NCBI RefSeq assembly: GCF_902713615.1
Contig: NC_052154.1
Location: 80,517,072 to 80,581,071 of the forward strand
Source of the DNA: Scyliorhinus canicula
Taxonomy: Eukaryota
Reading direction: 5' to 3'
Length of the DNA stretch: 64,000 nucleotides
Each line of letters begins with the position of its first letter. Positions within the stretch are counted from its first letter, which is position 1. A model generated the notes under the pieces. That model saw only the letters and a list, made by a program, of their open reading frames with translations. It was not told the origin of the DNA and did no database searches. Both the position numbers and the translations under genes were made by a program. This document shows, piece after piece, positions 1,113 to 58,920 of this stretch.

Positions 1113-1226
1113 GAGGAAATTCTATATGACTGGATCAATCCAATTTACCTGGATGTTTCAACTCAAGTTCGCATCCAAGATGAGTTTGAGGAGAAATCTG
1201 AGATACTTCTCAAGAACTTCTTCAAG
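1113..1226 (+). CDS. OGFOD1: OGFOD1 internal exon (equivalent to human exon 8), orphan or upstream copy
   Basis: Acceptor tttcag at 1107-1112 and donor AAG|gtgaaa at 1227. The exon is 114 nt, phase 0/0, encoding [38 protein letters not shown]. This matches human OGFOD1 [38 protein letters not shown] as I recall it. Confidence 0.9.
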
Positions 1227-2019
1227 GTGAAAGCTCAATTGCGGATTCGTTCAGCGGAAAGGCAACAGCCCTTTTAAAAAAAAAAAATGCTTGTGGAACA
1301 TGAACAAGAAAATGGATATGATTCATTGACAACAACCATGGAAAGGCCCGTGGAATTAATCAATGTCTTTATTTGAGCGTTGGTATGAGGTGTCCTCTTT
1401 TGTTCACTGCTGGTTTGTTTATGATGATTATCATATTCAGATGTAATACATGGTGATGGATTCAGCTGTTGTGGGAGAGGAGTGGGCTGTTATTTCTTTG
1501 GTTAAAGATTGCCACAGGAGTCAGATGTTATTAAAAGAAGAGAAACATAGACACTGAAAGCTAGTTTGGTACTTGGAACCCAACTATAAAGGCAGGTAGG
1601 CTGTGATGGACATGATACTTAAGGGAAGGGAGTCCTGTCCCAGGATTATACAAGGTTTATTCTGTTTAGATTAAGCTAAAACCCAAGGTAGAATAGGTTA
1701 ACTTCTTTAATATCGTTACATTAAGTATGATTTAATGTTAGCAACCAATTGCTTCACACAATCCACTTTCCTAAATTGTGCAAGAAAGACTAGGAATTCA
1801 AAGCAATCTTTGCCTCACCTTTTTTTTAACTTGGTCCACCTTCAAAAAGATTGAAGAAGTAAAAATGCAAAAGACACAGGGAGTTTTATTCTTAGAAATC
1901 TTGCTACCATACAAATGGATATCGAATAGTGAGTCAACTCCCCGAAAAATAAGCTAATTAGACAACTTGTACGCGTGATTGACACTACTGCACCCGACAA
2001 GATGCATACAACAGTATCA

Positions 2020-4250
2020 GGGACATAAGGACGAGGAGCAGGATTAGGGAATTCATCCCCTCGAGCCTGCTCCACCATTCAATACAATCTTGGCTGATCT
2101 CATCTTGGCCTCAACTCCACTTTCCTGCGCATTCCCCATAACCCTTCAACCCATTACTAATTAAAAATCTATCTATTACCACAAATTTACTCAATGTCCC
2201 GGCATCCACTGCACTCTGAGGTAGTAAATTCCACAGATTCACAACCCTTTGAGAGAAGTAATTTCTCCTCATCTCTGTTTTAAATCTGCTACCCCTTATC
2301 CTAAAACTATGATCTCTCGTTCTAGATTGCCTAAAAGAGAAAGCATCCACTCTGCGTCTACTTTGTCGATACATTTTATCATCTTATATACCTCAATTAA
2401 ATCTCCTCTCATTCTTCTAAACTCAAGAAAGTATAGGCCTAAACTGCACAATCTCCCTTCATAGGACAAACCCCATATATCTGGAATCAATTGAATGAGC
2501 CTCCTCAGAACTGCCCCTAATTCAACTACATCCGTCCTAAAATAAAGGGACCAAAGCGGTATTGCGGTCTCACCAATACCTTGTACAGTTGCAGCAACAC
2601 GTCTCGAATTTGTTCCTTCTTTAATTTGTTCCAGATTAAAGAATCTGTTCCTTTTGCTATGAATGCCAAAATTCCACATGCCTTCCTTATTACCTGCATA
2701 CTAGTTTTCTGAGATTCAGGTATAAAGACACCCAGCTTCCGCTGCTCCAAAGCACTCTTTAGCTTCTCTACATTTAGATAATAAGTTGCCTTTCCATCTT
2801 TCCGACCAAAATGGATAACCTCACACTTATCCATGTTAAACTCCATCTGCCAAATTTTGACCCATTCACCTCACCTATCTATATCAATTTGTAAAGTCTT
2901 ATTTCCTCATTGCAACTTACTGTCCCTCCTACTTTAATGTAATCTGCAAATTTGGCTATCGTACCTTCTATCCCTGCATCCAAGTCATTAATATATATTG
3001 TAAATAGTTGCGGCCCGAGAACTAAAAGCTACGGCATCCCACTAGTTACATCTTGACACCCAGAATAAGAACCATTTTTCTCAACTCTCGGCCTTCTGTC
3101 GGTTAGCCAGTGTTCTATCCAATCTAATAAATTACCTCAAACCTCATGTGACCGTACCTTGTGAATTAACCTTATGGAAGTCCAGATGTACTACATCTCC
3201 AGGATCCCCATTATCCACTTGGCTTGTTACATGTTCGAAGAACTCTAGAAAAGTAGTCACACAATTTGCCCTTCTTAAACCATGCTGAGTCTAATTGATC
3301 ACATTTTGACTGTCCAAATGTCCTGTTCTTTAATAATAGATTCTAACAATTTCCCAACTGCAGATGTTAAACTAACTGGTCTATAGTTTTGTACTTTCTG
3401 TCTCCCTCCCTTTTTGACGAAGGGCATTTTTGACATTAGCGTTTTTCCAATCCACTGAAACCTTTCCTGCATTCAGGAAATTTTAGAATATTATAACCAA
3501 TGGATCCAGCTGCCACGTCCTTTAAGATCCCAGGATGTGGCCCATCAGGCCCTGGGGACTTGTCGGCCTTCAATCCAATAGTTTGTTCATTACTTTTTCT
3601 CTTCCGATTATTGTTCTAAGTTCCTCACTTTCTATTACCTCTGCATTATCTGTTACTATCGGGATTATACTAGTGTCCTCCACCGTGAAAATTGAGGTAA
3701 AATATTGATTTAGCGTCTCTGCCATTTCTGTGTTCCCACCATGAACTCCCCGGTCTGATTCTCCAAGGGATCAACATTCACTTTATATACTCTCTTCCTT
3801 TTTATATACTTATAGAAGCTTTTGCCATCCTTTTTTATATTTTGCCCTAGTTTTCTTTCATAGTTTACTTTTGTTCTTTTCATAACTTTGATCTTTAAAC
3901 GTTTCCCAATCTTCCAACCTGCCACTGACTTTGCAATATGGTATACCTTAGTTTTTGTGTTATGTTATCTTTAGCTTCCATACTCAGCCACAGATATTTT
4001 CTCCCCCTCTTACAATCTTTCTTCTTCTCTTGAATATATTTTAGTTGGGAGAAATTGAATATCTCCTTAAACAACTGCCACTGCTCATCAGTCTTTTAGT
4101 CTTCCTGCCCAGGCCACTAGGGCCAAATCTTTTCTCATGCTTACATAATTATCTTTATTGAACTCCAGAACACGAGCGTGTGACTCCAGTTTCTTCCCTC
4201 AAACTAAGTTTGAAATTCCATCATGATATGATCACAATTCCAAAAGGATT
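2020..4250 (-). mobile_element. CR1 LINE, decayed ORF2 (RT and 3' end)
   Basis: Fragments RTRDHSFRIRGSRFKTEMRRNYFSQRVVNLWN, MEFNMDKCEVIHFGRK and YKYIKRKRV-KVNVDPLEN are CR1 ORF2 motifs. The 3' UTR near 2020-2130 is shared with the copy at 18080-18190. Confidence 0.9.
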
Positions 4251-4262
4251 ATTCGGAGGAAT

Positions 4263-4492
4263 GTACAGATACTCAATTCTAGTGTGCTTCACTCTTCTAC
4301 TCACAAGAAACTCTTGGAGTTAAAACTTGGCCTTTATTACAAGCTAAAGCAGGGGCTATTGGCATTACAAATTGGGATACCAGAGTGCACAGATTCAAGA
4401 GTGGTACAGACAGACATACTTTGAAATTCGGTTACAAGAAATTAGCATCAACCAATCATTTGCAACTAGTTATCTATGTCCAATCATGACAA
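4263..4492. repeat. Possible solo-LTR-like insertion between CR1 fragments
   Basis: Non-CR1 block starting TGTACA and ending TGACA, with AATAAA on the minus strand. No TSD found. Confidence 0.3.
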
Positions 4493-4504
4493 TCGATTAA
4501 GGAT

Positions 4505-4701
4505 GGGCAGCACAGTAACATTGTGGATAGCACAATTGCTTCACAGCTCCAGGGTGTCCGGTTCGATTCCGGCTTGGGTCACTGTCGATGCGGAGTCTGC
4601 ACATCCTCCCCATGTGTGCGTGTGTTTGCTCCGGGTGCTCCGGTTTCCTCCCACAGTCCAAAGATGTGCAGGTTAGGTGGATTAGCCATGATAAATTGCC
4701 C
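4505..4701 (+). mobile_element. HE1-type tRNA-derived SINE (V-SINE superfamily), 3'-truncated
   Basis: tRNA-like head with B box (GGTTCGATTCC), then the conserved core GGGTGCTCCGGTTTCCTCCCACAGTCCAAAGATGTGCAGGTTAGGTGGATT. Confidence 0.85.
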
Positions 4702-5335
4702 TACATCTGCAGGAACCCCATTATCCACTCTACTTTTCACATCTTCGAAGAACTCTAGCAAATTAATCAAACACGATTTGCCCTTCATAAAACCATGCTG
4801 ACTCTGATAGATTACGTTTTAATATTCCAAATGTCCCGTTCTGTAATAATGATTCCAACAATTTCCCCAGAACAAATGTTAAATGAATTGGCCCATAGTT
4901 TCCTACTAGGGGAATTACATTAGCGTTTTCCCAATCCACTGCAACCTCCACTATCTCTGCTGCCACTTTGTTTCAGACCCTAGGATGTAGGCCATCCGGC
5001 CTGGAGGACTTGCCTGCCTCAAATCCCAAACGTTTGTTCAGCACCTTTCCCCTCGTGATGGCGATTGTTTTAAGTTCCTCCTTTTCAACAACCTCTGAAT
5101 TACAAGTTAATATTCGGATGGTTGTGTTCTCCACCATGAAACCGAAGCAAAACACTGATTTAGCATCTCTGCAATTTCCCATTATTAACTTCCCAGTCTC
5201 GTCCCCTAAGGGATCAACATGGACTTTAGCTCCTCTCTTCATTGTCATAATCTTATAGAACCTCGGACTATCCATTTATATATTTTGCACTAGTTATACT
5301 GCCACATAGATATACGCTAGTCCAGTTCAAATTCT
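4702..5335 (-). mobile_element. CR1 LINE RT fragment
   Basis: KGKSCLINLLEFFEDV..RVDNG, VDWENANVIPL and GKSSRPDGLHPRV are CR1 RT-upstream motifs. Confidence 0.85.
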
Positions 5336-5949
5336 GGTCAATGTTCTAAATATAGAACCCAGAGGGCTCAAAACATTTACCTTCATTTAAAATCGTCATG
5401 ATTTGGGAACTATCTATTGAATAACACACATTTTTCTTTCCCCAATTACCCCCAGCTCCCTCGCAGCTTATCGGGATTAATGGCCATCTTACTGCAGTCA
5501 ATTAGAAGACCTGACAGCGAAGTCTGAGCTTGTCCTCCTTCCACTTCCAGAAAGTTCCATTCCAAGGTGGAAATCAGCAGTCAAGTTCCCTGGCAAACCC
5601 TCACCCCCAGCACCACCCATCCCACTTGGACATCCATGCGCCACTGCGCAACCCCGGGATGCAGTTCCCAGGCCATTGGAGGTAGCAGTAGCAGTGTCTC
5701 AGCCTGGCTCAGCCAATGCAGCTGAGATGGGGACAGACACTGGGACCTTCCTGATCATTTTACCTGTGGTAATAATGTCTACGTTAAACATCTAGAGATC
5801 TGGATATTTTTTATTTTTGAAATAATTTGAATTAGGTAAGGGAACAGGAGTCAGAAGTATCTGTTATTGTAATGATAAGTATTTATCTGGCAGTCAGAAA
5901 TAAAGGGGCAGCCCATCTTTATCCCTCGGGCCTTTTTTAGAAGGGTGAC

Positions 5950-7239
5950 CAGCAGCATCATGAGCTTTGTTTGGGTGCATGGGACCCCAAGGGTGAAGAG
6001 GGTCTTCTTGGAACGGGGTAGAGATTGGGGGGGGGGGGCTGGCGTTACCCAATCTCTCGTGGTACTACTGGGCGGCCAAAGTGTCGATGGTGTGCAAGTG
6101 GGTGATGGAGGGGGAGGGGGCAGCATGGAAACGGATGGAGAGGGCGTCCTGTGGAGATACAAGCCTGGGGGCCCTGGTAACGGCGCCATGGCCGCTCCCT
6201 CCTACGAGGTATACCACGAGTCCGGTGGTGGCGGCTACCCTGAATATTTGGGGGCAGTGGAGGCGACACAGGGGAGAAGTGGGGGGCTCGATGGACGCAC
6301 CATTAAGGGGGAACCATAGGTTCGTCCCGGGGAACATTGATGGGGGATTTCAGGGTTGGCACAGAGCGGGCGTCAGGCAGCTGAGGGACCTGTTTATTGA
6401 TGGGAGGTTTGCGAGCCTGGGGGAATTGGAGGAGAAATTTGGGCTCCCCCTGGGAAACATGTTCAGGTATCTGCAGGTAAAGGCATTTGCTAGACGGCAG
6501 GTGGAGGGATTCCCTTCGCTTCCTGCGAGGTGGGTGAGTGACAGGGTGCTTTCGGGGGTCTGGGTCGGAGAGGGGAAGATATCTGATATCTACAAGGTAA
6601 TGCAGGAGGTGGAGGAGTCGTCAGTAGAGGAGCTGAAAACTAAGTGGGAGGGGGAACTGGGGGAACAGATCGAAGACGGGACATGGGCTGATGCCCTGGA
6701 GAGGGTTAATTCTTCCTCCTCGTGTGCGCGGCTTAGCCTCATCCAATTCAAGGTGCTGCACCGGGCCCACATGACTGGGACGAGGATGAGTAGGTTCTTT
6801 GGGGGTGAAGACAGGTGTGTCAGGTGCTCGGGGAATCCAGCGAACCATGCCCATATGTTCTGGGCATGCCCGGCATTGGAGGAGTTCTGGAAGGGGGTGG
6901 CGAGGACAGTGTCGAGGGTGGTAGGATCCAGGGTCAAGCCAGGCTGGGGACTCGCGATTTTTGGGGTTGGGGTGGAGCCGGGAGTGCAGGAGGCGAAAGA
7001 GGCCGGTGTGCTGGCCTTTGCGTCCCTAGTAGCCCGGCGAAGGATTTTGCTACAATGGAAGGATGCGAGGCCCCCAAGCGTGGAGACCTGGATCAATGAC
7101 ATGGCGGGTTTTATTAAGCTAGAGAAGGTCAAATTCGCCCTGAGAGGATCGGTGCAAAGGTTCTTTAGGCGGTGGCAACCTGGCCTCGACTTTCTGGTTC
7201 AACGATAGGGTACTGGGATAGTAGCAGCAGCAACCCGGG

Positions 7240-7271
<32 letters not shown>

Positions 7272-7470
7272 GATGACTAAGTTTGTCTATTTAATTTAAA
7301 TTTATTTTTAAGTTCACATGTTGGGGTGGGGGGGGGGGGGGATCTGATACATGTGTTGATACGGTTTGGGGGGTGTTACGGTTATGGGTTATTTTGTTGC
7401 ATTTCATTGTTTGTTGTTATACTTTATATTTTCTGTAAAAAATTCCAATAAAAATTATTTTTTTTAAAAA
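5950..7470 (+). mobile_element. Tx1/L1-clade LINE, 5'-truncated 3' part of ORF2 with G-run 3' UTR and A-rich tail
   Basis: ORF 6081-7208 (375 aa) carries the C-terminal zinc knuckle CVRC...HMFWACP. Poly-G at about 7241-7270; AATAAA and A-rich end at about 7447-7478. Confidence 0.9.
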
Positions 7471-7938
7471 TAAATAAAGGGGCAGAAGCAAGGAACAATT
7501 CTAAACATTTGAAAACCACTTGCATGGCCTCACATAGAAATGGTGTCCTACTTTGGGTCTGCACTTTAGGATGGATATCACGTCCTTGGAGGGGAGTTTT
7601 GCTGGAATGGTATCAGGCCTGAGGGACTTCAGTGATATGACGGAGACTAGCGAAACTATGATTGCGTTTCTGGCAGCAGAGACAGGATTCTGAGAGGGTT
7701 AGTTCGAGAAAACGAGGCAAAACCGTTTTCATCGATGGTTTGCTGTTACTATCTGCAATGCGCTGACTGAAAGTGTGACGGCAGAATATTGAACAGACGC
7801 CGCAGAAAGGGAATTGGAGCAATGTTTGAAAAGAAGGAAAATGAGAACTATAGGACTACATAATTCTATGATCCCCACTCCTGCCCAATCCCCACTTCAC
7901 CTTTATGGAATATAATGAAATAAACATTGTCACCCTAC

Positions 7939-7982
7939 CGGTTCCTCTCTCTGAGCTGCTTCCACAGAATTTCTATTATTAT
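7939..7982 (-). CDS. IgSF receptor gene 1, cytoplasmic exon
   Basis: Strong acceptor (ccttctctttctttcag). 44 nt, phase 1 to 0, encoding (D)NNRNSVEAAQREEP, followed by donor gtaggg. In frame with the TM exon. Confidence 0.65.
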
Positions 7983-8369
7983 CTGAAAGAAAGAGAAGGC
8001 ATGAACAACTGAATCAGCGCACCGGCGAAACCAGTATCACGCTTTCGCTGCAAAACATATTTACTGTGTATGAAGTAAGGAAACCTGAATTGTGACTGTT
8101 CAGCGGCTTCAACTGCAGTATGATGTGCATTACCGTTCATTACCACAGTGGCGCTGTATCCAGGTCAATCAAGTTGCCTTTGTGCAATGGGGTGAAAGAT
8201 GTGATAAGGAGTTGCAGCCCATTTTAACCCCGCAACATTGCAACATAAATAAAATTCGGGGGAGATATAAAGACAATTGTTCGTTCGAAATCACCCGTTT
8301 TACATTATCGCAGGAAGTCGAAATAATACTTAAAATGCTTATATTTTAAGATCTCTTCCTGCATGTACC

Positions 8370-8505
8370 TTGTGTTGCCCGATTATGTATTTTCTTTTTA
8401 TTTTATTTTCTTTTCATTGTCTTAATGATCTGTTTGAGCTGTTTGCAGAAAAATACTTTTCACTGTACCTTGGTACACATGACAATAAACAAATCCAATC
8501 TAATC
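8370..8505 (+). repeat. LINE-type 3' tail repeat
   Basis: ATGATCTGTTTGAGCTG..GCAGAAAAATACTTTTCACTGTACCTTGGTACAC.TGACAATAAACAAATCC recurs at 50860-50985. Confidence 0.7.
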
Positions 8506-8747
8506 CATTGATACTCTATGTAAAGCACACAGTGTTAATAATTCCGGGTGTAAATTAGAAGTGTATCAATCGAGTGAGTAGTACGAATTTGAAGGTGGAA
8601 TATTTGCAATTCAAAATCCACTTTACATCGTCATTTTCAACACTCAATCACATGACGCTCATTCGGTGTCAATTTTATTAATTAAAGGTGCAGAAACATG
8701 CTCCTTGATCCTCTATAATGAATCATTATTTGCCAAAAGGTTCTTAC

Positions 8748-8852
8748 CAGCTGATGCTTTCAATTTGAGTCTTGCCCAAACAATTATCAACAGTAAAATA
8801 GCCGATATGCCACCTACACGTCCAATAATGAGTGGAAGATTGGTACCAGCCC
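8748..8852 (-). CDS. IgSF receptor gene 1, transmembrane exon (Arg at the N-terminal side of the TM)
   Basis: Acceptor cctgtag, donor G|gtaag. 105 nt, phase 1/1, encoding (G)AGTNLPLIIGRVGGISAILLLIIVWARLKLKASA: a hydrophobic span followed by a basic stop-transfer segment. Confidence 0.85.
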
Positions 8853-9130
8853 CTACAGGATCAACAAATGAGTGAAATAAGAAACTGTGGAATACAACGA
8901 GATTCACACAGGAACACAGAGAGGATCACACACAGGGTGAGTTGCAAATGTGTCTCTGAGGATAATAGCCCATAATGTCAGTGGACCTCAACCACTTTCA
9001 TTTCTGTTAGCTGTAGCAGTACAATAATTATAACGTTTATCAAATGACATCAACTACACGTTAATCATGCAATTTATGGAGTAAACAAAGTCCATTGCAA
9101 AAAGGCGCAGTCAGCTTCTGACTGGACTAG

Positions 9131-9395
9131 CATGGTGGCACAGTGGTTAGCACTGCTGCTTCACATCTATAGGGACCCAGGATCGATTCCAACCTTGGAT
9201 GAATGTCTGTGTGGAGTCTGCACTTTCTCCCCATGTCTGAGCCTGTTTCTCCAGGTGCTCCGGTTTCCTCCCACGGTCCAGCAAAGATGTGCTGGTTAGG
9301 TGGATTGGCCATGATCAATGCCCGGGATTATGGGGATAGGGCGGAGGAGTCGGCCAAGATGGATTGCTCTTTTGGAGGGTTAGTGTAGACCCAAT
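9131..9395 (+). mobile_element. HE1-type V-SINE
   Basis: Head GGTGGCACAGTGGTTAGCACTGCTGC and V-SINE core. Confidence 0.85.
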
Positions 9396-9589
9396 GGGCC
9401 TTGCAATGACTTTGCACTACCGCTCCCTTCGGGCCATAATTCCACAGACCACCGACTCCCTGACAAAAAAAAGCATTGCCCCTGATAAATGGGAGGCCCC
9501 TTGTTCTTTAACTGGGTCCTCTAGTTCTAGATTCTCCCACAAGAGGAAACATTCTCTCAACCACCATCCTGTTAAGTTTTATAGGGACC

Positions 9590-9815
9590 TTTTTTCAAAA
9601 TAAATTTAGAGGACCCAATTCATTTTTTCCAATGAAGGGGAAATTTAACCTGGCCAGTCCACCTACCCTGCACATCCTTTTGGGTTGTGGAGGTGAGACC
9701 CGCACAGACATGGCAAGAATGTGCATACTCCACACAGTCAGTGACCTGGGGCCGGTATCGAATCCAGTTCCTCAACACTGTGAGACAGCTATGCTAACCA
9801 CTGCACCATCATGCC
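9590..9815 (-). mobile_element. HE1-type V-SINE
   Basis: Reverse complement of the SINE head and core (GCTAACCACTGCACCATCATGCC at about 9793-9815). Confidence 0.8.
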
Positions 9816-10512
9816 TCCTTCAGTTTTATGAGGATCTAACATTTCAAAACATTCTTCCATTCCTCTAAACTCCAATGGATACAGATCTTCTCCCACACTG
9901 ACATTGTTAAAAAACACAGAGCGTTAACAATTCCTGGTGTAATAAATTGGAAGTGTATAAATGGAGTGAATAGGTCGAATGGGAAAGTGAAACCCATAAG
10001 ATAACCTCTTCATGCGGGAATCAGTGAAGTGAAACTTCTCTGAACTGCTTCTAAAAATATTATATAATTTGATTAGAAAACAAAACTGCAAATAGTACTC
10101 CAGATGTGCACTCCAGATGAAACTTGCATTTATAAAGCACCTTCCACATAGTTAAACACCCTAAGATGTTTCACAGAGCATTATCAAACAAGGCTGAACA
10201 GCGGCTCACATAAAGTGATGTGAGGAGAGGTGGAGATAGGGGTCTGAAGGAATGAAAGTCATAAAGGGAGCCAGAGGGAGGGACATTTCTGACTTTATGG
10301 TGTAAACAGCTGAGAACAAATGATGATAATAATATTCCCATATATTGAACTTAAATGCACAGTAAATCTGTTAAAACCGATCTTTTTGTCTCTGTGTAAG
10401 TTAATTTCATTTGGCAAGAATTTGCCGAGGAATAAGCTTTCAGTTTTTGAGCGCTTCCCACATCAACCTTTCGATTCAGATCTTTTCAAAGGAAAATTCT
10501 TTCTCCTCCTGC

Positions 10513-11085
10513 TGTTATGGGCCAGGGTTTAGAGAACCCCAAAGTGTATCATGGAGTTCACCTGACCCACAACTTTTAATAGATTGTGGTATGGGGAGCA
10601 CACGGCCCACTCTACAGGTGTGGTACAGCAGAAATGAAAAAGTATTTTTTGAAGCAAAACAATGTTTATTCTCTGAACTCAACTTAACCTTTTTGAAACA
10701 AACAGTGAACATCTTAGCAACTATTATTTCAAAAACAACCCCCAAAGAATACAATAAGTAATCCGTAGGCTGTCCTTTTAACATCTAGAAGACTTAAAAA
10801 ATACCTTTAAACAGCAGCACATTAGATTTGCATTCACTACTGAGAACATTTATAATTCTGAATTCACCAAATGATCAAGAGATAGTCTTTTGATGGCAGA
10901 GAGAACAGCAGTAAACCTGCTCTATCAGGCTTCAGCTCCAACACTGAAAACAAAACTAAAACACACCCTGCAGCAAACAGCCTAAAATGGAAGTTAAAAA
11001 GCTGACAGGTAGCCCAACTCCACCTACTCTCTGACATCACTGCAGTAGCAAACACCCATTTCTTAAAGGTACTCTCACTACAGAT
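10513..11085. mobile_element. LTR-like interspersed repeat inserted in a duplicated intron segment
   Basis: Begins TGTTATGG and interrupts one copy of a local ~280-bp intronic duplication. Right end and TSD not resolved. Confidence 0.45.
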
Positions 11086-11518
11086 ATCCATTGATTCCCA
11101 TTGATGTGACATTGTGAGTAAACACACTCCACATTCTCCATGTATATTCGAGTTTGAACAGCCGGTCAGATACATGTCTAATAAATAACTACAATTTGCA
11201 GCGGTTCCCGGGCTCCTCGCTGTAAATGTTGCTAAGAACGTGAGGAGGAATAAGCTCTCCGTTTTTGAGCGGTTCCCAGATCAATCTCCAGTTTCAGATC
11301 TTTTCAGGGAGAAATTCTCTCTCACCCAGTTACAAACCAGCTTGATAATTTTAATTAATTTTAATTTTAATTCATTCAATTGATGTGACATTGGAAGTAA
11401 ATACACGCCACACTCTCTGTATATTAGAATTTGAAAAGCTGTTCAGATACATGTCTAATAAATAACTGCAGTTTGCAGCCTTTCCCGCGCTCACTGCTGT
11501 AAATGTTTCCAATCTTAC

Positions 11519-11815
11519 CTTGTGGGACGGTGTAGCTGACACTGGCTGGCACCTTAAGGGAGATATGAGATACCAGACAGGTATAAACTACTCCATTCGG
11601 TACAGGCCTTGCTTCTTTCAAAGAGCTGGAGACCTCAAAAAGACCCTCCGCCGTCTCGTTTTTCACAGTTTCTATTCCGGTCAGAATTTCCACACCATCT
11701 CTTTGCCAGGAGATTCTGAAATATTCCGGGTAAAAGGCAGCCGTTTTGCATTCGAACTTCAGAGAAATCGCTGAATTCTCTTCAATCTGAACCATTTTCA
11801 GGGGAGTTGGGGGAA
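11519..11815 (-). CDS. IgSF receptor gene 1, C1-set Ig constant domain exon
   Basis: Acceptor ttgaag, donor G|gtaag. 297 nt, phase 1/1. Sequence (V)PPTPLKM...FECKTAAFYPEYFRISWQRDG...EVSSSL...YTCLVSHISL has C1-set hallmarks (FxC, FYP, W, YxCxVxH). Confidence 0.93.
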
Positions 11816-12522
11816 CTTCAATCGAGAAAAATAACACAATTTAAATGTTATTTTTCTACCTCTGTTATGTTACATTCCTAATGTGACAATAATTATCCGT
11901 GCCATCTTTTTTCTTTAACCTCATGTTTGCAATTATATTAGAAATAATTTCATGGCGTACAAAAATTGTTTGGGTGTATTGCCAAAGGAACACAGGGAGG
12001 ATAAATCTCCCAGAGCTGGCGACAATGGGTAAATCACGGATCACTGTTCCGGCTGGAAGGTCAGCTTCTGGAATGGGAGCGTTTTTTGCTGAGAAGACCC
12101 AAGTGAGATTCCTTGTCCCAATCCATGGGAGGGAGCGTAAACAAGTCACGAACAACAAAATCCCTCACGTTTTCTCTCAGAATTGTGGCCGAACTAAACA
12201 TTCATTTTTAAAAATCCATTGTCCAAATAATTCATATGTTGCTGAACATATTTTGTTTTTTACATTTAATATTGAAAACAGGTGCGTAATTGAGTTATAC
12301 CCAATGTCTATAAAGTTTCCACACTCGATGTTACTACGTGTATAGATTAAAATCCGTGCATTAACAATGATTAAACAACATTTCTATGGTGGGTGTTTCC
12401 GATCGTGCAGCCTTTACAAAAGTTACTTTCCCCAGAGGGGGATTTGAGGCCTGAAACATATTTCTCAACAGGACAGGGCTTTATTACTAATTATATATGG
12501 GAGAGTAGATCACAACTTCCAT

Positions 12523-12775
12523 GTGGGTAGCACAGTGGTTAGCACTGTTGCTTCACAGTGCCAGGGTCCCAGGTTCGATTCCCGCTTGGGTCACTGTCTG
12601 TGCCGAGTCTGCACATTCTCCCGAGTCTGCATGGGTTTCCACCGGTTTGCTCCCGTATGTGAATTGGACATTCTGAATTCTCCCTCCGCGTACGCGAACA
12701 GGCGCTGGAATGTGGCGACTGGGGGATTTTCACAGTAACTTCATTGCAGTGTTAATGTGACAATAAAGATTCTTA
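12523..12775 (+). mobile_element. tRNA-derived SINE: HE1-like head and core with a second-family tail
   Basis: HE1 head and core, then GGAATGTGGCGACT.GGGG.TTTTCACAGTAACTTCATTGCAGTGTTAATG...ACAATAAAGATT. The same layout is on the minus strand at 46160-46395. Confidence 0.8.
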
Positions 12776-14345
12776 TTATGCATAGTGAAATCAAATACAT
12801 AATCTTCACTGCATATGTTATGTAATCCCAGGGATTTTGCCCTTCTACAATTTCATTGAGTATGTTGGGCATGGCTTGCCTGGAGAATCTTCTCTCATTT
12901 TTGATATTCCATTGCTCCACAGTCACCGTTTAACTGGAAAAATACTTAATTAGGTTTGCATTATTTTGTTGTTCATTTCAAATCGCTCAACATAGTTTCT
13001 TCATACATTTACATTTCTAAATTCTCGTAAAAGAGAATTATTAAATTAGAAACATTATTAACTTTCATGATTATGTCAGTCTATATTTCCAGCAAAGACT
13101 CAGAATTCCTCTATTATTTTCCAATGGATCTACTTTACGTTTAATATAACATGCGACAGAATCCCCCCTTGGCAGAAAGAAGCTTTCTCTCGGTCCCCTG
13201 CCCTAACCTTCTTCTGAGCATGGAGAGTGTAGAGGGAGATCATAAATTACAAATACTGGAGCCCAGGCGTTTATAGAAATGTTCGGTGATATCCAGCCTT
13301 CACTTCAGCAGTTGTGAATGAAACAGGGATAGTCCCATTGGTGTACCCCAGAGGTTCAAACTGTCCTGCGAGCTCTCGGATTGTGGTTGAATCCAGAATT
13401 GAGGGCAGGATCAACATCTCCCCTCTGACTGGGTTGTAGGATTCCTTTGTGGAAAGAGCTCGGAATTTCATACAAGTTATTAATGGACACAAATACAAAG
13501 TATAAAGTGCGGACATAGGGGCAGGGGAGATTTCGGCCGCTCCAGCCGGCTCTGCCTTCATTTAGATTATGCCTGATCTCTACCTTATCTCCATTTGTCC
13601 CATTTCGGTCCATTCTCCCGATACCCACGATTTATTTCCCTTGATTTCCATCTCAAATTTCTAACAGTTCGGCATAGAATTAATCGATTGGCAGTTTTCA
13701 GCAGGGGCCTAAAAGTAATCTTGTGTGTGGAATATTAATGTCAGGAAGTAAGAGGAGTTTCCGCTTGAATGTATACTGAAGGCACTTCATTGGGGCGGAT
13801 TGGTCTTTAACGCTGTATAAAGGAGTTTATTTAGGAGGTGTTCAAATTGTTCTGATTAAAGGTCGCAGATCTGAAGCCTTGACTCTGCCCATATGTGTTC
13901 ATAGATCCCTTGAGTCATTTTCCTGTTTAAATTATTTCAGTATATGCAATATTTTGCTTTTGTATTAAAATTGTCCCCAGTGTCGCACTTTGGCGCCATT
14001 ATTTTGCTGAGCGTGAAGCGAGCTATCTTATCCCATTGACTAACCAGAAGCAAGATTTAAGCAGTTATGCCGTTTCTTCTACCTTGGCTCAATCAGAATT
14101 GCAACCTCACTAAAAGCACTAATTGGATGAAATGTCACGAGGACGAGGAGTGGGTGAAATTGATCTTGGGCCTGAGCGCAAAACGAGCGATAAGGGATCG
14201 ACGACCGTTGAACGTCAAGGTCAATGGAAAAGAAAATTCCTCAAAGCGTAAAACAAACCGATTCCGCCAGATTTTCAACTAGTAATAAGTTAAAATTACA
14301 TAACTCGCACAAAGCCGGAAAGCGCCCTGGAACAATTACACTTAC

Positions 14346-14651
14346 CAAACACAGTGAGCTGGGAGCCACCTCCATCCCCAATCTTGACCTGTTGATGTTT
14401 GACTTTACAATAATACATTCCGGAGTCTGTAATACTCGCATTTAGAATTTCTAATGTACTCCGTCCCTTCTTTGGACTAAATCTCTTCCTGTCGTCTGGT
14501 TCCAGCAAAGATTCAGCGCCGCGTTTCCACCAAGAAACTTCAGGAGCATCTCCATATATGGTAAACGCGCAGAACATGGAAACATTGTCACCCCTGGCTA
14601 CCGTCAGGAGTTTAGGGAACTGTTCCACTTTGTTCGAAGTTACTTTGGCGG
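14346..14651 (-). CDS. IgSF receptor gene 1, V-set domain with germline-joined J-like G strand
   Basis: Acceptor ttcctag, donor G|gtaag. 306 nt, phase 1/1. Sequence KVEQFPK...GDNVSMFC...VSWW...STLEILNASITDSGMYYC...GDGGGSQLTVF has the canonical C-W-C, DSGxYYC and GxGS/TxLTV J motif in a single exon. Confidence 0.95.
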
Positions 14652-14859
14652 CTAGGAAATAAGTAGAAAAGGATGTGGACAACAACTGCATACGTCAGAG
14701 AAGTAAAATAACTAAATGGAGGAAAATTCAAAAACAATGAAGAAACACCAGCAGTGGAATTTGAGAACGGCAGCATCTATTTTTACAATGTATACAGTTG
14801 CAGATGTAAAATACCATTTAAGCTATTCTAAATCGGCAACATATAACAACTCAACATAC

Positions 14860-18193: not shown

Positions 18194-18199
18194 TGTGTT

Positions 18200-42833: not shown

Positions 42834-42941
42834 CTTTGACTGTACCTCGGTTTAAAATAATTCCCAACGATGACTGCCAGCACCATTATTACCAACAAAC
42901 TCGCTAAATGTCGAGACAGCAACAGGATACGTTAGCAGCAC
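42834..42941 (-). pseudogene. IgSF receptor gene 2, TM exon (frameshifted)
   Basis: Acceptor tgttgcag, donor AG|gtgagg. The hydrophobic frame ILLLSRHLASLLVIMVLAVIVGNYFKPR is 1 nt out of register with the phase-1 acceptor, which reads into TAG. A downstream acceptor (catttag) would restore the frame. Confidence 0.7.
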
Positions 42942-43206
42942 CTGCAACAGAGTATCGGAGATAAAAGGTCAAAGGACGTCAATATCAATGCCAGCAGCAA
43001 GAAAACCCAGCCACAGATGGGACCGGAAAATTGTGTAAATATATTTTTTTAATATTCAAAATAAAATGCCAACAAATGAAACAATTCGCAATCTGAATAA
43101 TGAATCCCCAATGTAATAAACGAACGGATCAAATGTTAACACGTGTCTTCGGCGTGTTAATAGTAAGCGCGCAAACCATTTTGAACGGGATGAATGAACA
43201 GGGTAC

Positions 43207-43506
43207 CTTGAAAGTTGAAATTGACTTTGGCTGGTGTCTGGAGAGAAATATGAGACACTTGACAGCTGTAGGTAGCTCTGCTGCGGAATGGCCTCGTATC
43301 TTTCAAAGTGCTGCAAACTTCATACGTTCCCACTGCGGTTCGCTGCTTCATCGTATTTATCCCAGTTACAACTTCCGCGTCGTCCTTATACCAAGTCACG
43401 TTGAGATCTTCGGGGGAAAACTCAGCTGTTTTACGCAGCAGAGGCGGGAAAGTAGATAGACGACATTTGGATTCAACCAAGCCGATTGTCAGAGGAGTGG
43501 GCCGAA
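43207..43506 (-). pseudogene. IgSF receptor gene 2, C1-set exon (first Cys replaced by Arg)
   Basis: Acceptor catccaag, donor G|gtaccc. 300 nt, phase 1/1, open. (V)RPTPLTI...LLRKTAEFSPEDLNVTWYKDD...YSCQVSHISL is clearly paralogous to 11519-11815, with CGT where gene 1 has Cys. Confidence 0.88.
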
Positions 43507-44179
43507 CTTGGATGGGAAAAGAATCTGGTTTATTGACTGAAATGTAAATTGTTTATTGTTCTATTTGTTCAGAACACGAATTTAGGACCAGGCTGTCTAT
43601 TCATTGGAACGTTTAAAAAATTTTCATGTTCAAATATTATTAAACATGTAGTTAGACATTACATGGCGCCCTTAACGGAGAAAGATATGTAATGCATTTG
43701 GTAGAATCAGAGAGTCACGGAGGGCAGATGGAGACTATTCGGCCCACCGTGTGTATGCTGGTTCCACGAGAGAGCTACGCAGTTAGTCCCATTCCCATTC
43801 TCCATAGCCTGACCAACATTCCATTTTAAATATGAACGCAATCTCCCGTGGGAATTTCTGTTTATTCCCATTACTTCAAGGTAGTGACTTCCGAACGACA
43901 GAACGTGTCGCGCAAGACAATTCCCCCCCGCCCCCCACTCTTTTGCAACTTAGCTGAAATGTGCACCCTCTGGTTCGGGACTAACGTTTGTCTGTTTATC
44001 GAGTCACACCGCTTTATCATGCTGCAGGAATCCATTTAGCTCAGTATTCTGATCTCCTCTCAGGCAGAGCAATCCACGTAGTCACATTGACATACTGAGG
44101 TAGATCCCTTTAAAACCATATAGATTCTCCACTGTTTCTGAAAATACATCCCACGTGGTAACAATTCTACGCTCCCTCC

Positions 44180-44525
44180 AGCCCTGTCAGATCAGTTGGA
44201 ACCATAGAATTTACAATGCAGAAGGAGGCCATTCGGCCCATCGATTCTGCACCGGCCTTTGGGAAGAGCACCCGATTTAAGCCCACATCTCCACCCCATC
44301 CCTGCAACCCAGTAACCCCACCTAATCTTTTTGGCCACTGAGGGGCAATTTAGAATGGCCAATCCACCTAACCTGCGCATCTTTGGACTGGGGGAGGAAA
44401 CCCGAGCACCCGGAGGAAACTCACGCAGACAAGGGGAGGACGTGCAGACTCCACACTGTAACCCGAAACCAGAATTGAAACCGGACCCTGGAGCTGTGAG
44501 GCAGCAGTGCTAACCACTGTGCCAC
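44180..44525 (-). mobile_element. HE1-type V-SINE
   Basis: Reverse-complement head, core and tail. Confidence 0.85.
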
Positions 44526-45375
44526 TAACACTAATATCACAAATTTCCCTAATAATTACTTTCCAATATTTTAATAGATTTCATTCGTTTCCAAACATCC
44601 TGATCTCCCTTGACCTGCCGGAATTTCGTTGGAAGAGCCGCGGAGACCCGAGAGAGACCTGAGACCCGCGAAGCCGAAGTTGCAGGAGTTGTAAGGAAGA
44701 ATTCACTCGTGTAGTGTTGAGATGAACCTTAATGAAGTTCCATGTGGCCGTCCTGTGCGGTGGCATTGTAAATCTACTTAGAAATGGCCTTGTGGTTTTG
44801 AAATCCTAAAGTTGCTCCAAAAGGAGAACAAAATTTCATGCCAGTTTTTACTTCATTGGAGCCACCAACGCTTCTCCGCGGCGGAAAATGGCTACGTTTG
44901 ATGTTCCATGCAAAATTGTAGGAACTTTCTAAGCAAACGTTTGAACACAAACAAACAGAGGAAACATTCCATCCAGATATCAGGCCATATCCAGCACACA
45001 TGGACTTTGTGCGATAATGGAAACCAGACCAGAGCCTCTGTTACACCCCCTCTGGTTTATATTGCCATTTAAGTTGGAATCAACTTCCTGTCAACTATTC
45101 TGCTCATCCTGCGCAAAGCCAGGTCACATGGGAGAATAGGCATTTCTGAGCAAAATGCGTTCGACTTCCTGGGGGGGGGGGCTGATTTTTCCCCCCCTGT
45201 ATTCTGCAAGATTTCACCCCTGGAGTGTCAGTGTCTTGATGCTGACACTGGATATATAAATCGAAGGCACCATTAAAGCAAACTTTTCCACCTCTTTGGT
45301 ATTTTAGCAAATAACCATTGCACACCTCACGCCTGTCCCGTCAGCATCGGGGACTCGCGGACACATGGAAAATCA

Positions 45376-45553
45376 AATGAAATGAAAATCGCTTATTGTC
45401 ACAAGCAGGCTTCAAATGAAGTCACTGTGAAAAGGCCCTAGTCGCCACATGCCGACGCCTCTTCGGGGAGGCTGTTATGGGAATTGAACTGTGCTGCTGG
45501 CCTGCTTGGTCTGCTTTCAAAGTCAGCGATTTAGCCCTGTACTAAACAGCCCT
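45376..45553 (-). mobile_element. tRNA-SINE inserted at the 3' end of the gene 2 V exon
   Basis: Head AGGGCTGTTTAGTACAGGGCTAAATCGC supplies the in-frame TAG at 45544-45542. (TTTCA)n tail. Confidence 0.85.
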
Positions 45554-45861
45554 CTGGAGCCCTGAGTCGGTTCCATTCCCAAACAATCTTCCCCCGCAGT
45601 ACACAGAGCAATAACAGCGGCCAGAATCTTGGAGGCTTACATTCAGAAATTGGAGGACGGCTGCCCCTCTTTTCCAAAGCCTATACTGTCTCTTGTTCGC
45701 TTCTTCGTCGGCCAAGAACTCACTGTCACCATGTCGCCACCAGTGAACCACGACCTCTGAATCCTCTGGAAAGACTGGGAATGTGCAATAGAGAGTAATG
45801 TTCGTTCCGCTGAGTGCAAACTTGAATGGAGGGATTTGGACAATGGTGGAATCCCCAAGAA
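45542..45861 (-). CDS. IgSF receptor gene 2, VJ-type V domain; splice donor lost, ends in a SINE-derived stop
   Basis: Acceptor ttctgatag. (V)LGDSTIVQIPP...GTNITLYC...VHWW...LQFLNVSLQDSGRCYC...FGNGT, then DSGLQRAV*. No GT donor after the J motif. Confidence 0.85.
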
Positions 45862-46037
45862 CTATCAGAAAGCCAATATAAATACAAAAATACAGATCTA
45901 ATTGCTCAAGTAAATAAAGATACAAATGGGATTTTAAAAATTTATAATTTATAAGAACTGCTGATAGAAATCCACTGATCAAATAATATGACTATACAAA
46001 AATTGTTCTTATTTCTAACCAGTAAATATTAAGATAC

Positions 46038-46077: not shown

Positions 46078-46159
46078 GTCGGACAATGGAAGTCGAACGC
46101 ATTTTGCTCTGAAATGCCTATTCTCCCATGTGAATTGCTGGTTAGTGATAGTCCAGATA

Positions 46160-54847: not shown

Positions 54848-54965
54848 GATGCCAGGGTCATGGGCTTTGCCCTCATAGCAGGCATGGCTCAGGTAATGGG
54901 CTTCGCCCTCTTAGCAGGTATGGCCCAGGTCATGGACTTCGCCCTCATAGCAGGCATGGCCCAGG
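54848..54965. repeat. 36-bp tandem repeat x3
   Basis: Unit CAGGTCATGGGCTTCGCCCTCATAGCAGGCATGGCC, read as VMGFALIAGMAQ x3 on the plus strand. Confidence 0.85.
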
Positions 54966-55009
54966 CGCAGGGTATCACCCACTGCATCCACATGGCCTGT
55001 AGTCTCCAC

Positions 55010-56610: not shown

Positions 56611-57520
56611 TCCCATATGTTTACGCCCATGGAGGATGGATTGGATGTACAGGTGGTGGAGGGAGGAGGGATTGGAGCGGGTCAAGGATTGTTCTCAGAG
56701 GGGAAGTTTGCTGGGTTTGATGAACTGTGGTAGAGGCAAGAGGGGGAGTGAGCTTTTGTACTGGCAGGTCTGGGACTTTGCGCGAAAGGGGCTACTTATG
56801 TTCCCCCAACTACAGGAGTACACACAACTGGAGAAAATGTTGCTGCCAGATGAGGGCAGGATCGGGGACATATATGGGTGGTTGGGAGAGCGGGGCAAGG
56901 CGTTAGTGGAAAGGATTAAGCGGACGTGGGAGGAGGAATTGGGGAGGGAGATAGGATGGGGACTCTGGTATAAGGCGATGCAGCAACTGAACTCAACCTC
57001 CTACTGTGCTAGAATGCGCTTGATTCAGTTTAAAGTGGTGCACAGGGTACACATGACTCGGGCTCGGGTGAGTCGGTTCTTTCCGGGGTAACCGATGGAT
57101 GCGAGAAGTGTGGACGGGGGCTGGTGAATCATGTTCACAAGTTTTGAGGATGCGAGAGGTTGGAGAGCTATTGGGAGGTGGGTTTGGGATCCTATCGATG
57201 GTAGTGGGGGCCGAGGTGAAGCTAGACCCCATGGTGGCGATGTTTGGGGTTTTGGAGGTGCAGGAGCTGCTGGGGGGTAGGGGACCAATGTCATGACCTT
57301 CACCTCTCTGATTACCCAGCAACGGATTGTTTTGAACTGGAGGTCAGATACGCCATCGGGGTTGTGGCTTGGCTGGTAGACTAGTACAGGTTTCTCTAGG
57401 GGAGGAGAGAAGGGATTAAAAGGGGAAAAATGTACACACTGTTAACTTTGCTTTGTTGGGATGTTGTTTTGTTGTTATTGTTTATGTTTGAAATAAAACA
57501 GCTTCAAGAAAAATAACATT
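56610..57520 (+). mobile_element. Tx1/L1-clade LINE 3' fragment (decayed)
   Basis: NSTSYCARMRLIQFKVVHRVHMTRARVSRFFP matches the other copies; A-rich tail. Confidence 0.85.
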
Positions 57521-57779
57521 ACAGCATGGAGGATCTGTATGGGGTGAACAAAGTGATGTTTAATACAAGAGTGATATTACAATAATGAAAATGAAATGAA
57601 ATGAAAATCGCTTATTGTCACGAGTAGGCTTCAATGAAGTTACTGTGAAAAGCCCCTAGTCGCCACATTCTGGCACCTGTCCGGGGAGGCTGATACGGGA
57701 ATCGAACCGTGCTGCTGGCCTGCTTGGTTTGCTTTAAAAGCCAGCGATTTAGCCCAGTGAGCTAAATCAGCCCCATAGT

Positions 57780-58080
57780 GACTATCTCTCTATTAAAGCC
57801 TAGGTTCACCCACCTAATGAGTTTATTAAGTCTTTACCGGTCCAGATGGAGCGACTGGAGAGAAGGATAATCACAGGTTAAAGAGGTGTGTATTGTCTCA
57901 AGCCAGGACAGTTGGTAGGATTTTGCAAGCTCAGGCCAGATGGTGGGGGGAGAATGTAACGCGACATAAATCCAAGGCCCCAGTTGAGGCCGTACTCATG
58001 TGTGCGGAACTTTGCTATCAGTTTCTGCTCCGTCTGGACCTGTAAAGACTTAATTACCTGCACAGACTCGCATTGAAAGT
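57780..58080 (-). mobile_element. Penelope-like 3' fragment
   Basis: EQKLIAKFRTHEYGLNWGLGFMSRY resembles the GIY-YIG terminal motif E..LI..F.T...GLN. Confidence 0.7.
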
Positions 58081-58234
58081 ATCATCTTGCATCATTGACT
58101 TTTCCTTTATATGTCTTTCTGTAATTCACTGAAGGAGCTGTGCTCCAAGAGTGATTTGAAAGAAACCTGTTGGACTTTAACCTGGTGTTGTAAAACTTCT
58201 TCCTGTGCCCACCCCAGTCCAATGCTGGCATCTC

Positions 58235-58495
58235 CACATCATGTGTGGAGTTTGCTCTTTCTCGGTGTGTCCGCGTAGGTTTCCTCAGGTGCTCTGGTTT
58301 CCTCCCAGAGTCCAAAGATGTGCAGGTTATGTGGATTGGACATGCTAAATTGCCCATCAGTGTCCAAAATGGTGTGGTCACTTGGATAGGGTGGGGGAAG
58401 GGTCTGAGGAAGGGTGCTTTTTCAGAGGGTCGGTGCAGACTGGATAGACCAAATGGCCTCCTTCTGCACAGTAGGGATTCTCTGCTATGATTCCG
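58235..58495 (+). mobile_element. HE1-type V-SINE, 5'-truncated
   Basis: V core and tail (CTGTAGGGATTCTATG-like end). Confidence 0.8.
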
Positions 58496-58551
58496 CCCAT
58501 TCACTGTTTTCTTTCCCTCCGGATGCTGCCGGACCTGCTGAGTTTTCCCGG

Positions 58552-58920
58552 CTGTTAGGTGGCGCTGTTGCGGGAGGCGATGATTCCGTTGGTGGGCAGG
58601 CTGTTGCCGGGAGACGTAGTCCCTGGTGAGGCAGCAGCTGGCGGTGACACTGGATTTGAAGCAGTTGCTCCCGGGTCGCGATGAGCTCCAAGAGGTTACG
58701 GAGTGATCCGGAGAGTCGGGTTGGTGGGAAGAGACAGCTAAAGCATCAGGAGCTTGCGGAACTCAACCCGCTGCTGCTGGAAGTGAAGGAGCGAGTGAGC
58801 GAAGCCTGGAGCCGGGGGCTCGAGTACTCACATGGTGAGGGCCAGTCAGAGATATGGGGCTGGGAGAAGCTCTCAGAAGATTGGGAAGCGGCCAGTCCGA
58901 TAATCCAAGGCCGGAGAAAT
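58552..58920 (+). promoter_or_regulatory. CpG-rich island around OGFOD1 exon 1
   Basis: Visibly GC- and CpG-rich non-repeat DNA spanning the 5' UTR and first coding exon. Confidence 0.6.
58681..58834 (+). CDS. OGFOD1: OGFOD1 first coding exon
   Basis: MSSKRLRSDPESRVGGKRQLKHQELAELNPLLLEVKERVSEAWSRGLEYSH, then G|gtgagg. It aligns to human MNGKRPAEPGPARVGKK...KKQVAEAWSRRTPFSH. 154 coding nt, phase 1, the same size as I recall for human exon 1. Confidence 0.88.

What the first reader, a model, noticed from the sequence alone, without database searches (positions are those of the whole stretch)
1113..58834. OGFOD1 exon 8 lies 57 kb upstream of OGFOD1 exon 1 on the same strand, enclosing the Ig receptors
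An internal exon precedes the first exon, which is impossible for a single gene. I could not find exons 9 onward between 1226 and 58681. The simplest reading is a tandem segmental duplication whose unit is [OGFOD1 5' part + Ig-receptor genes], with an upstream OGFOD1 copy truncated after exon 8. A housekeeping ribosomal prolyl hydroxylase would thus be carried along in an immune-receptor expansion and mark the duplication unit. In human, OGFOD1 is head-to-head with NUDT21. Here only about 130 bp of unique DNA precede the ATG, and no NUDT21 exon 1 is visible.
Basis: partly seen in the sequence, partly recalled or inferred. Interest (0 to 1): 0.72.

Follow-up and report, generated by a model that had tools for sequence, protein, structure and literature searches.

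The report
Truncated OGFOD1 copy beside catshark Ig genes
In this small-spotted catshark window an internal OGFOD1 exon lies 57 kb ahead of an OGFOD1 first exon, so the assembly holds a cut-off extra copy of the gene's front part next to two antibody-like receptor genes; this is an ordinary partial gene duplication, or possibly an assembly error.

Summary
Window 1113-1226(+) is a cleanly spliced OGFOD1 exon. It matches residues 264-301 of Scyliorhinus canicula OGFOD1 (XP_038662964.1) at 38 of 38 residues. Window 58681-58834(+) is OGFOD1 exon 1, 51 of 51 identical. No other OGFOD1 exon and no N lies anywhere in the 64 kb.

The annotated catshark gene spans only 37.4 kb, but 62.8 kb follow the internal exon without the next exon. 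One gene therefore cannot explain both pieces. The assembly must hold a 5' OGFOD1 copy that ends after this exon, plus a second OGFOD1 that starts at 58681.

The tandem-unit idea ([OGFOD1 5' part + Ig genes]) is not shown. The two Ig genes are V-C1 receptors on the opposite strand and are old paralogs. In Mustelus and Heterodontus a V-C1 gene sits about 7 kb downstream of OGFOD1 on the same strand, so the neighbourhood is ancestral and the catshark block looks inverted.

Short-read contigs from two individuals show one version of the exon-8 region at flat depth. This does not separate a recent real duplication (about 0.58) from a false duplication in the assembly (about 0.28). An unchecked scan note of an in-frame TAG in the upstream copy favours a real pseudogene. 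Interest is low.

The parts
1..1112 (+). 3' end of the intron that precedes the internal OGFOD1 exon (upstream, truncated copy)
   Evidence: It holds no OGFOD1 coding match and ends in a polypyrimidine tract plus AG at 1111-1112. DNA contigs of two individuals tile it continuously into the exon (table 8).
1113..1226 (+). It is the last OGFOD1 exon of the upstream copy.
   Evidence: 38/38 identical to S. canicula XP_038662964.1. E 1.7e-12 to human OGFOD1 4NHX. AG/GT splice sites. Every one of 19 RNA-like runs holds 5 of the 6 sampled 31-letter words.
1227..8775 (.). Sequence after the truncated copy. It has no exon 9. Positions 1227-2000 are unique DNA; after that come LINE and SINE fragments. 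An A12 run lies at 1276-1287.
   Evidence: tblastn is negative. The read-depth profile shows single-copy depth at 201-2000 and high-copy repeats at 2001-4200 and 4400-4800. There is a zf-RVT match at 5997-7205. Reading through the donor adds 17 codons and then a stop (alignments).
8776..14694 (-). V-C1 Ig-superfamily receptor gene 1. V exon lies within 14299-14694, C1 exon within 11427-11840, candidate transmembrane exon at 8776-8838.
   Evidence: Pfam V-set/I-set E 5.8e-12 and C1-set E 9.3e-07. The hydrophobic stretch comes from my own scan. The best real solved-structure match of the C1 exon is UrIg2 9dmx, E 6.7e-13.
42866..45991 (-). V-C1 Ig-superfamily receptor gene 2. V exon lies within 45545-45991, C1 exon within 43160-43552, candidate transmembrane exon at 42866-42928.
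   Evidence: Pfam C1-set E 1.7e-09; ig/V-set matches are weak, E 5e-4 to 8e-3. By tblastx it is 49% (C1) and 41% (V) identical in amino acids to gene 1. Transmembrane scan.
58242..58497 (.). SINE copy 183 bp upstream of the OGFOD1 start codon
   Evidence: It matches at least 8 other copies in the window at 70-80% identity.
58681..58834 (+). OGFOD1 exon 1 (start codon to the split codon after residue 51) of the second copy, presumably the complete one
   Evidence: 51/51 identical to XP_038662964.1, E 2.6e-26. GT donor at 58835-58836. No exon 2 lies in the remaining 5.2 kb.

Best explanation
The window holds the 3' end of a partial, non-functional duplicate of the catshark OGFOD1 gene. This duplicate is the 5' part of the gene and ends after the exon for residues 264-301. 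The 5' end of the complete OGFOD1 gene starts at 58681.

Between the two pieces lie 57.5 kb of transposon-rich DNA with two V-C1 immunoglobulin-superfamily receptor genes on the opposite strand. The duplication is recent: both exons still encode exactly the annotated protein. It arose by a local structural rearrangement in a region where OGFOD1 and V-C1 receptor genes were already neighbours.

What is shown: the two exons, the absence of all other exons, the strand and type of the Ig genes, and the synteny in two other sharks.

What is inferred: that the copy starting at 58681 is the annotated complete gene; that the upstream copy carries exons 1-7; that it is dead; and the mechanism. I favour an inversion-linked duplication over a plain tandem one, because the V-C1 genes are inverted relative to their orientation in Mustelus and Heterodontus.
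For: - Both exons are 100% identical in protein to S. canicula OGFOD1 and have intact splice sites.
- No other OGFOD1 exon lies in 64 kb.
- The annotated gene spans 37.4 kb in S. canicula and 33-62 kb in five other sharks. An intron longer than 62.8 kb after this exon is incompatible with that model.
- The window has no N, so the exon-8-to-exon-1 order sits in gap-free sequence.
- DNA contigs of the probable source individual (X1) and of an independent individual (X9) run unbroken from the preceding intron through the exon to 2084. No systematic break appears there (table 8).
- All 19 RNA-like runs from 8 studies hold 5 of the 6 sampled exon words, and each lacks one. This fits one silent nucleotide difference between this copy and the expressed mRNA.
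- An unchecked scan note (s1-249310) reports an in-frame TAG at a conserved Trp in the OGFOD1 exons 3.1 kb before the window. XP_038662964.1 is not flagged low quality and has every Trp. So the annotated protein does not come from that copy.
- A V-C1 gene is adjacent to OGFOD1 in Mustelus and Heterodontus.
Against: - The second copy of the internal exon, the junction of the duplication and the upstream exons all lie outside the window.
- Short-read contigs show only one version of 1089-2084 at flat depth of about 4-6, with no twofold step anywhere in 1-6000. A collapsed recent duplicate should show double depth unless the whole 6 kb is duplicated. A single real locus split in two by the assembler would give exactly this flat picture.
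- 100% protein identity of both exons is also what a false haplotypic duplication predicts.
- The TAG note is an unchecked AI reading.
- The missing sixth word could be a private allele or an effect of the word index.
- I assume the window comes from the same assembly as the annotation (GCA_902713615). This is likely, because X1 differs from the window by about 0.6% and X9 by about 1.2%. It is not proven.
Confidence: 0.58

Rival explanations
1. Assembly artefact. The catshark has one OGFOD1 gene. The upstream 5' copy is a false duplication (an uncollapsed second haplotype) or a chimeric contig join in the long-read assembly, so the exon-8-before-exon-1 order does not exist in the animal.
For: - Both exons are 100% identical in protein to the single annotated gene.
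- Contigs from two individuals show only one version of the exon-8 region, at the same depth (about 4-6) as unique DNA 3-5 kb further on. There is no second 90-99% version.
- Both individuals' contigs carry 5 extra letters (TATAA) at 1632 that the window lacks (table 4). The window sequence here is therefore either a minor allele or imperfect.
- No protein product of a second catshark OGFOD1 is in the 90% cluster.
Against: - There is no N anywhere between the two exons. False duplications usually flank gaps.
- A retained haplotype would not be expected to carry a nonsense codon at a conserved Trp (note s1-249310, unchecked).
- The exon word absent from all 19 RNA-like runs suggests a copy-specific difference.
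- Coverage of the runs is too low (about 5x) for depth to decide.
Confidence: 0.28
2. One reading: a plain tandem segmental duplication whose unit is [V-C1 receptor genes + OGFOD1 exons 1-8]. A second set of the same V-C1 genes would then lie upstream of the truncated copy. This is a sub-case of the best explanation.
For: - It is the simplest single event that puts exon 8 ahead of exon 1 on one strand.
- The scan note placing NUDT21 about 120 kb before the window leaves room for one more unit of about 80 kb.
- The nearest V-C1 gene starts about 12.5 kb upstream of exon 1. That is just outside the 10-kb flanks in which other sharks show no gene.
Against: - In Mustelus and Heterodontus the V-C1 neighbour lies downstream of OGFOD1 on the same strand, not upstream on the opposite strand.
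- The scan's notes on the roughly 40 kb before the window mention a retroelement and the OGFOD1 TAG but no Ig genes. This is weak evidence.
- Nothing in the window repeats.
- The two V-C1 genes in the window are old paralogs, so there is no sign of a recent receptor expansion here.
Confidence: 0.18
3. One gene with a giant intron. Exons 9-13 lie beyond the window, and the exon 1 at 58681 is a stray duplicate of exon 1 alone inside that intron.
For: Shark introns can be long. No exon 2 follows exon 1 within the last 5.2 kb of the window.
Against: The annotated gene spans 37.4 kb in this species. The intron would have to exceed 62.8 kb. In the old S. torazame assembly, the exons from about the fourth to the last fit in 30.4 kb.
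Confidence: 0.04

Closest known systems
Partial (truncated) segmental-duplication pseudogenes of vertebrate genomes
   Same: The copy keeps its introns and splice sites, stops at an intron breakpoint, lies within 100 kb of the parent gene, and is reported to carry a premature stop.
   Different: The second copy and the junction were not seen. Copy identity at DNA level is unknown apart from one 114-bp exon, which holds 5 of 6 sampled words of the mRNA.
False duplications in long-read vertebrate reference assemblies (retained haplotypes)
   Same: Two copies with identical coding sequence, only one sequence version in short-read contigs, and flat depth.
   Different: There is no gap at or near the copies within 64 kb. 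A nonsense codon is reported in one copy only.
OGFOD1 (prolyl 3-hydroxylase of ribosomal protein uS12/RPS23; structure 4NHX)
   Same: The two exons encode the N-terminus and the start of the linker/C-terminal region, with 100% identity to the catshark orthologue.
   Different: The upstream copy lacks all exons for the C-terminal Ofd1_CTDD domain, so it cannot encode a full OGFOD1.
Shark germline V-C1 receptors ('SIRP-alpha-like' in RefSeq; UrIg-type C1 domains, PDB 9dmx)
   Same: Both genes between the OGFOD1 pieces have one V-type and one C1-set exon with a hydrophobic exon after them. A gene with the same domains neighbours OGFOD1 in Mustelus and Heterodontus.
   Different: Full gene models, tails and expression were not worked out here. 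They are on the opposite strand to the neighbours in the other sharks.

Membership tests
OGFOD1 orthologue (complete gene) | N-terminal 2OG-Fe(II) oxygenase domain (PF13661/PF13640) followed by the C-terminal Ofd1_CTDD domain (PF10637), encoded by collinear exons | tested here: not met
   For the upstream copy, no exon beyond residue 301 lies in the 62.8 kb after 1226. For the copy at 58681 only exon 1 is in the window, so its completeness could not be tested.
OGFOD1 orthologue (complete gene) | Sequence identity of the exons to the species' annotated protein | tested here: met
   38/38 and 51/51 identical to XP_038662964.1.
Processed pseudogene (retrocopy) | Exons joined without introns, with a poly(A) tail and target-site duplications | tested here: not met
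   The exon stands alone with AG/GT splice sites, and the neighbouring exons are absent from the flanks. The A12 run at 1276-1287 lies 50 bp into the intron, not at an mRNA 3' end.
Segmental duplication | Two genomic copies of at least 1 kb with at least 90% identity, both supported by reads at about twofold collapsed depth | tested here: inconclusive
   The second copy lies outside the window. Contigs of two individuals show one version at flat depth of about 4-6 across 1-6000. Coverage is too low and no baseline is available.
False (haplotypic) duplication of the assembly | Each copy at half depth, differences between the copies behaving as alleles, and often next to a gap | tested here: inconclusive
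   No gap in the window. Depth is not calibrated. The long reads of the reference animal were not available to me.
Shark V-C1 (SIRP-like / UrIg-like) receptor family | One V-set and one C1-set Ig domain on consecutive exons, then a transmembrane segment | tested here: met
   Pfam V-set/I-set and C1-set matches for both genes. C1 matches UrIg2 9dmx with E 6.7e-13. The transmembrane candidates come only from a hydropathy scan.

The most novel reading that the evidence does not exclude
A single complex rearrangement (duplication of the OGFOD1 5' part with an inverted copy of the downstream V-C1 receptor block) created a truncated OGFOD1 gene. That gene is still transcribed from its own promoter. 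Having no exon 9 to splice to, it reads through its last donor for several kb, convergent with the nearest V-C1 gene on the other strand. A housekeeping promoter would then drive antisense transcription into an immune-receptor gene. The only hint is that RNA-like contigs of run X11 cover 1001-5872 but not the preceding intron at 601-1000. A minus-strand transcript ending near 1080 explains this equally well.
Probability: 0.12. Interest if true: 0.4.

Novelty: new member of a known kind. Interest (0 to 1): 0.2.

Why it matters
If real, this is a young partial duplicate of a conserved ribosomal prolyl hydroxylase gene. It marks a structural rearrangement at the edge of a shark V-C1 receptor cluster. 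It is useful as a breakpoint marker for dating how that cluster was reshuffled in catsharks, and as a warning for gene annotation. It does not change what is known about OGFOD1 or about immune receptors. If it is an assembly artefact, it matters only as a correction to the reference genome. The observation worth carrying forward is the conserved neighbourhood of OGFOD1 and a V-C1 receptor gene in three shark orders.

Tried and rejected
- Exon 1 alone against solved structures gave nothing. Shark orthologues were needed.
- Self-comparison of the window found only dispersed repeats and no unit.
Only gene lists within 10 kb could be used. Pristis was not on record.
- The search of earlier findings does not accept places outside the window. 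I could not list what lies before or after it beyond three notes.
- A Pfam scan of 48 ORFs passed as one alignment gave family counts only, not places. I repeated it protein by protein.
It found nothing.
- Read laying at 90% likeness was swamped by SINE/LINE copies. Most variant rows for the unique 1-2 kb were cut from the output, so the exact differences between the window and the contigs are not known.
- Depth could not be calibrated to copy number.
- Two paper searches (OGFOD1 + shark; false duplication + Scyliorhinus canicula) found nothing relevant.
- dN/dS of the duplicated exon could not be computed, because the DNA of the second copy was not available.
- The processed-pseudogene and giant-intron readings were considered and rejected (see the membership test and the rivals).
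Full report
THE OBSERVATION

Window 1113-1226(+) is bounded by an AG acceptor (1111-1112) and a GT donor (1227-1228). It translates to a 38-residue peptide. That peptide matches human OGFOD1 (PDB 4NHX, chain residues 284-320) with E 1.7e-12.

A search of 1.84 billion representative proteins with this peptide returned OGFOD1 proteins. A follow-up search gave full-length shark orthologues. Their cluster includes the two RefSeq isoforms of Scyliorhinus canicula.

Against the S. canicula protein XP_038662964.1 (P0200, 547 aa), the exon is 38/38 identical to residues 264-301. Window 58681-58833 is 51/51 identical to residues 1-51, with E 2.6e-26. One more base completes a split codon before the GT donor at 58835-58836.

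tblastn with 16 OGFOD1 proteins found no other OGFOD1 exon on either strand. The genome is the small-spotted catshark or something indistinguishable from it, and scan notes say the same.

WHY ONE GENE CANNOT EXPLAIN IT

The annotated catshark gene spans 37.4 kb from first to last coding base. The orthologues span:
- 61.7 kb in S. torazame;
- 35.4 kb in Hemiscyllium;
- 32.7 kb in Mustelus;
- 36.2 kb in Cetorhinus;
- 40.6 kb in Heterodontus.

In the window, 62.8 kb follow the internal exon without the next exon. The assembly must therefore contain at least two OGFOD1-derived segments: one that stops after this exon, and one that starts at 58681.

An unchecked scan note (s1-249310) reports OGFOD1 exons with an in-frame TAG at a conserved Trp 3.1 kb before the window. 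The RefSeq protein has every Trp and is not flagged low quality. The annotated, intact gene is therefore most likely the one that starts at 58681, and the upstream segment is a dead 5' copy. This last step is inference. I could not read DNA outside the window, and the chromosome files of all annotated sharks were too large to be served.

WHAT LIES BETWEEN

- Two Ig-superfamily genes lie on the minus strand.
  - Gene 1 has a V exon within 14299-14694 and a C1-set exon within 11427-11840.
  - Gene 2 has a V exon within 45545-45991 and a C1-set exon within 43160-43552.
  - Each has a hydrophobic candidate transmembrane exon after the C1 exon.
- The two genes are 41-49% identical in amino acids, so they are old paralogs and not a fresh expansion.
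- The best meaningful solved-structure match of the gene 1 C1 exon is shark UrIg2 (9dmx, E 6.7e-13). Scan notes describe a large shark family of such V-C1 receptors that RefSeq labels SIRP-alpha-like.
- The rest is LINE reverse-transcriptase fragments, a hAT-like ORF and many SINE copies. One SINE ends 183 bp before the OGFOD1 ATG.

SYNTENY

In Mustelus asterias and Heterodontus francisci, a gene with V-set and C1-set domains (318 and 321 aa) starts about 7 kb after the OGFOD1 stop codon, on the same strand. OGFOD1 and a V-C1 receptor gene were therefore neighbours before the catshark event.

In the catshark window the V-C1 genes point the other way and lie ahead of the complete OGFOD1. Neither can be tested inside the window, because self-comparison shows only dispersed repeats at 63-77% identity.

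In none of the six shark assemblies is any gene called within 10 kb upstream of OGFOD1. The absence of a NUDT21 first exon near 58681 is therefore normal for sharks. A scan note puts NUDT21 about 120 kb before the window.

REAL OR ARTEFACT

I laid contigs of three runs and raw RNA reads of a fourth on 1-6000.

- DNA contigs of the probable source animal (X1) differ from the window by about 0.6%. Those of an independent animal (X9) differ by about 1.2%.
- Both sets tile 1-2084 without a break. One X1 contig spans 1089-2084, which is the exon plus 858 bp after it. The local sequence is therefore genuine and present in two animals.
- There is only one version of it. In X1, depth in the bins of 1201-2000 equals that of the single contig.
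- Depth is flat at about 4-6 from 200 to 5800 wherever the DNA is unique.
- A second copy diverged by 1-10% would have appeared as a second contig set. A collapsed near-identical copy should show double depth, unless the whole 6 kb is duplicated. A single real locus that the assembler wrote twice would look exactly like this.
- At about 5x coverage, and without a baseline, depth cannot decide.

A word search with the 114-bp exon gave a small hint. All 19 RNA-like runs from 8 studies hold 5 of the 6 sampled words, and each lacks one. This would follow from one silent difference between this copy and the expressed mRNA. It favours a real paralog with about 1% divergence, but a private allele or an effect of the index is possible.

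Together with the gap-free sequence and the reported nonsense codon, I put a real, recent partial duplication at about 0.58. I put an assembly false duplication or misjoin at about 0.28, and a giant-intron reading at about 0.04.

HOW IT WORKS

If real, the upstream copy is a truncated pseudogene. It keeps the promoter-proximal exons for the catalytic double-stranded beta-helix domain and lacks the C-terminal Ofd1_CTDD domain. It is reported to carry a premature stop.

Reading through its last donor would add 17 codons and then stop (alignments). RNA-like contigs of run X11 cover 1001-5872 but not 601-1000. A few oligo-dT reads sit next to the A12 run at 1276-1287. This could be read-through of the truncated copy, or a minus-strand transcript ending near 1080. 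The strand could not be calibrated.

KNOWN OR NEW

Partial segmental duplicates of housekeeping genes are common. Nothing suggests a new function. No paper in the library links OGFOD1 and sharks. I rate the finding as a new member of a known kind, with low interest. It needs long-read confirmation before anyone builds on it.

Noticed in passing
window 8776-8838 (-): The candidate transmembrane exon of V-C1 gene 1 reads LPLIIGRVGGISAILLLIIVW, with an arginine inside the hydrophobic stretch. Activating receptors that pair with adaptor chains have this feature. The ORF continues for only about 20 residues after the stretch.
   Followed up: no
window 11427-11840 (-): The best meaningful solved-structure match of the gene 1 C1 exon is the shark protein 'UrIg2 V-C1-C2-C3' (PDB 9dmx, E 6.7e-13). 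It scores above MHC, IgM and B7-H6 C1 domains.
   Followed up: partly
window 1001-5872: RNA-like contigs of run X11 (label 'organism B', but only about 1.7% different from the window) cover the internal OGFOD1 exon and the 4.7 kb after it at depth 3-16. The 400 bp before the exon are uncovered. This means either read-through of the truncated copy or a minus-strand transcript ending near 1080. An AATAAA lies on the minus strand at 1098-1103.
   Followed up: partly
window 1632: Contigs of both DNA individuals (X1, X9) carry 5 extra letters (TATAA) at full depth that the window lacks. This is either a small assembly indel or a rare allele of the reference haplotype.
   Followed up: no
window 1113-1226: All 19 RNA-like runs from 8 studies hold 5 of the 6 sampled 31-letter words of the exon, and each lacks one. 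This suggests a single silent nucleotide in this copy that is absent from expressed OGFOD1 mRNA.
   Followed up: partly
Mustelus asterias and Heterodontus francisci OGFOD1 loci (no DNA held): A 318-321 aa gene with V-set and C1-set domains starts about 7 kb after OGFOD1 on the same strand in two shark orders. This is a conserved OGFOD1/V-C1 receptor neighbourhood that I did not find mentioned in the two paper searches I ran.
   Followed up: partly
window 19516-21009 (-): A 498-codon open frame with a weak DUF4371 match, and a hAT dimerisation domain among the first 48 ORFs scanned (1-24041). This is a fairly intact hAT-type transposase gene between the two Ig genes.
   Followed up: no
S. torazame OGFOD1 locus (no DNA held): The OGFOD1 gene spans 61.7 kb in S. 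torazame against 37.4 kb in S. canicula and 33-41 kb in four other sharks. The congener may have its own insertion or rearrangement inside the gene.
   Followed up: no
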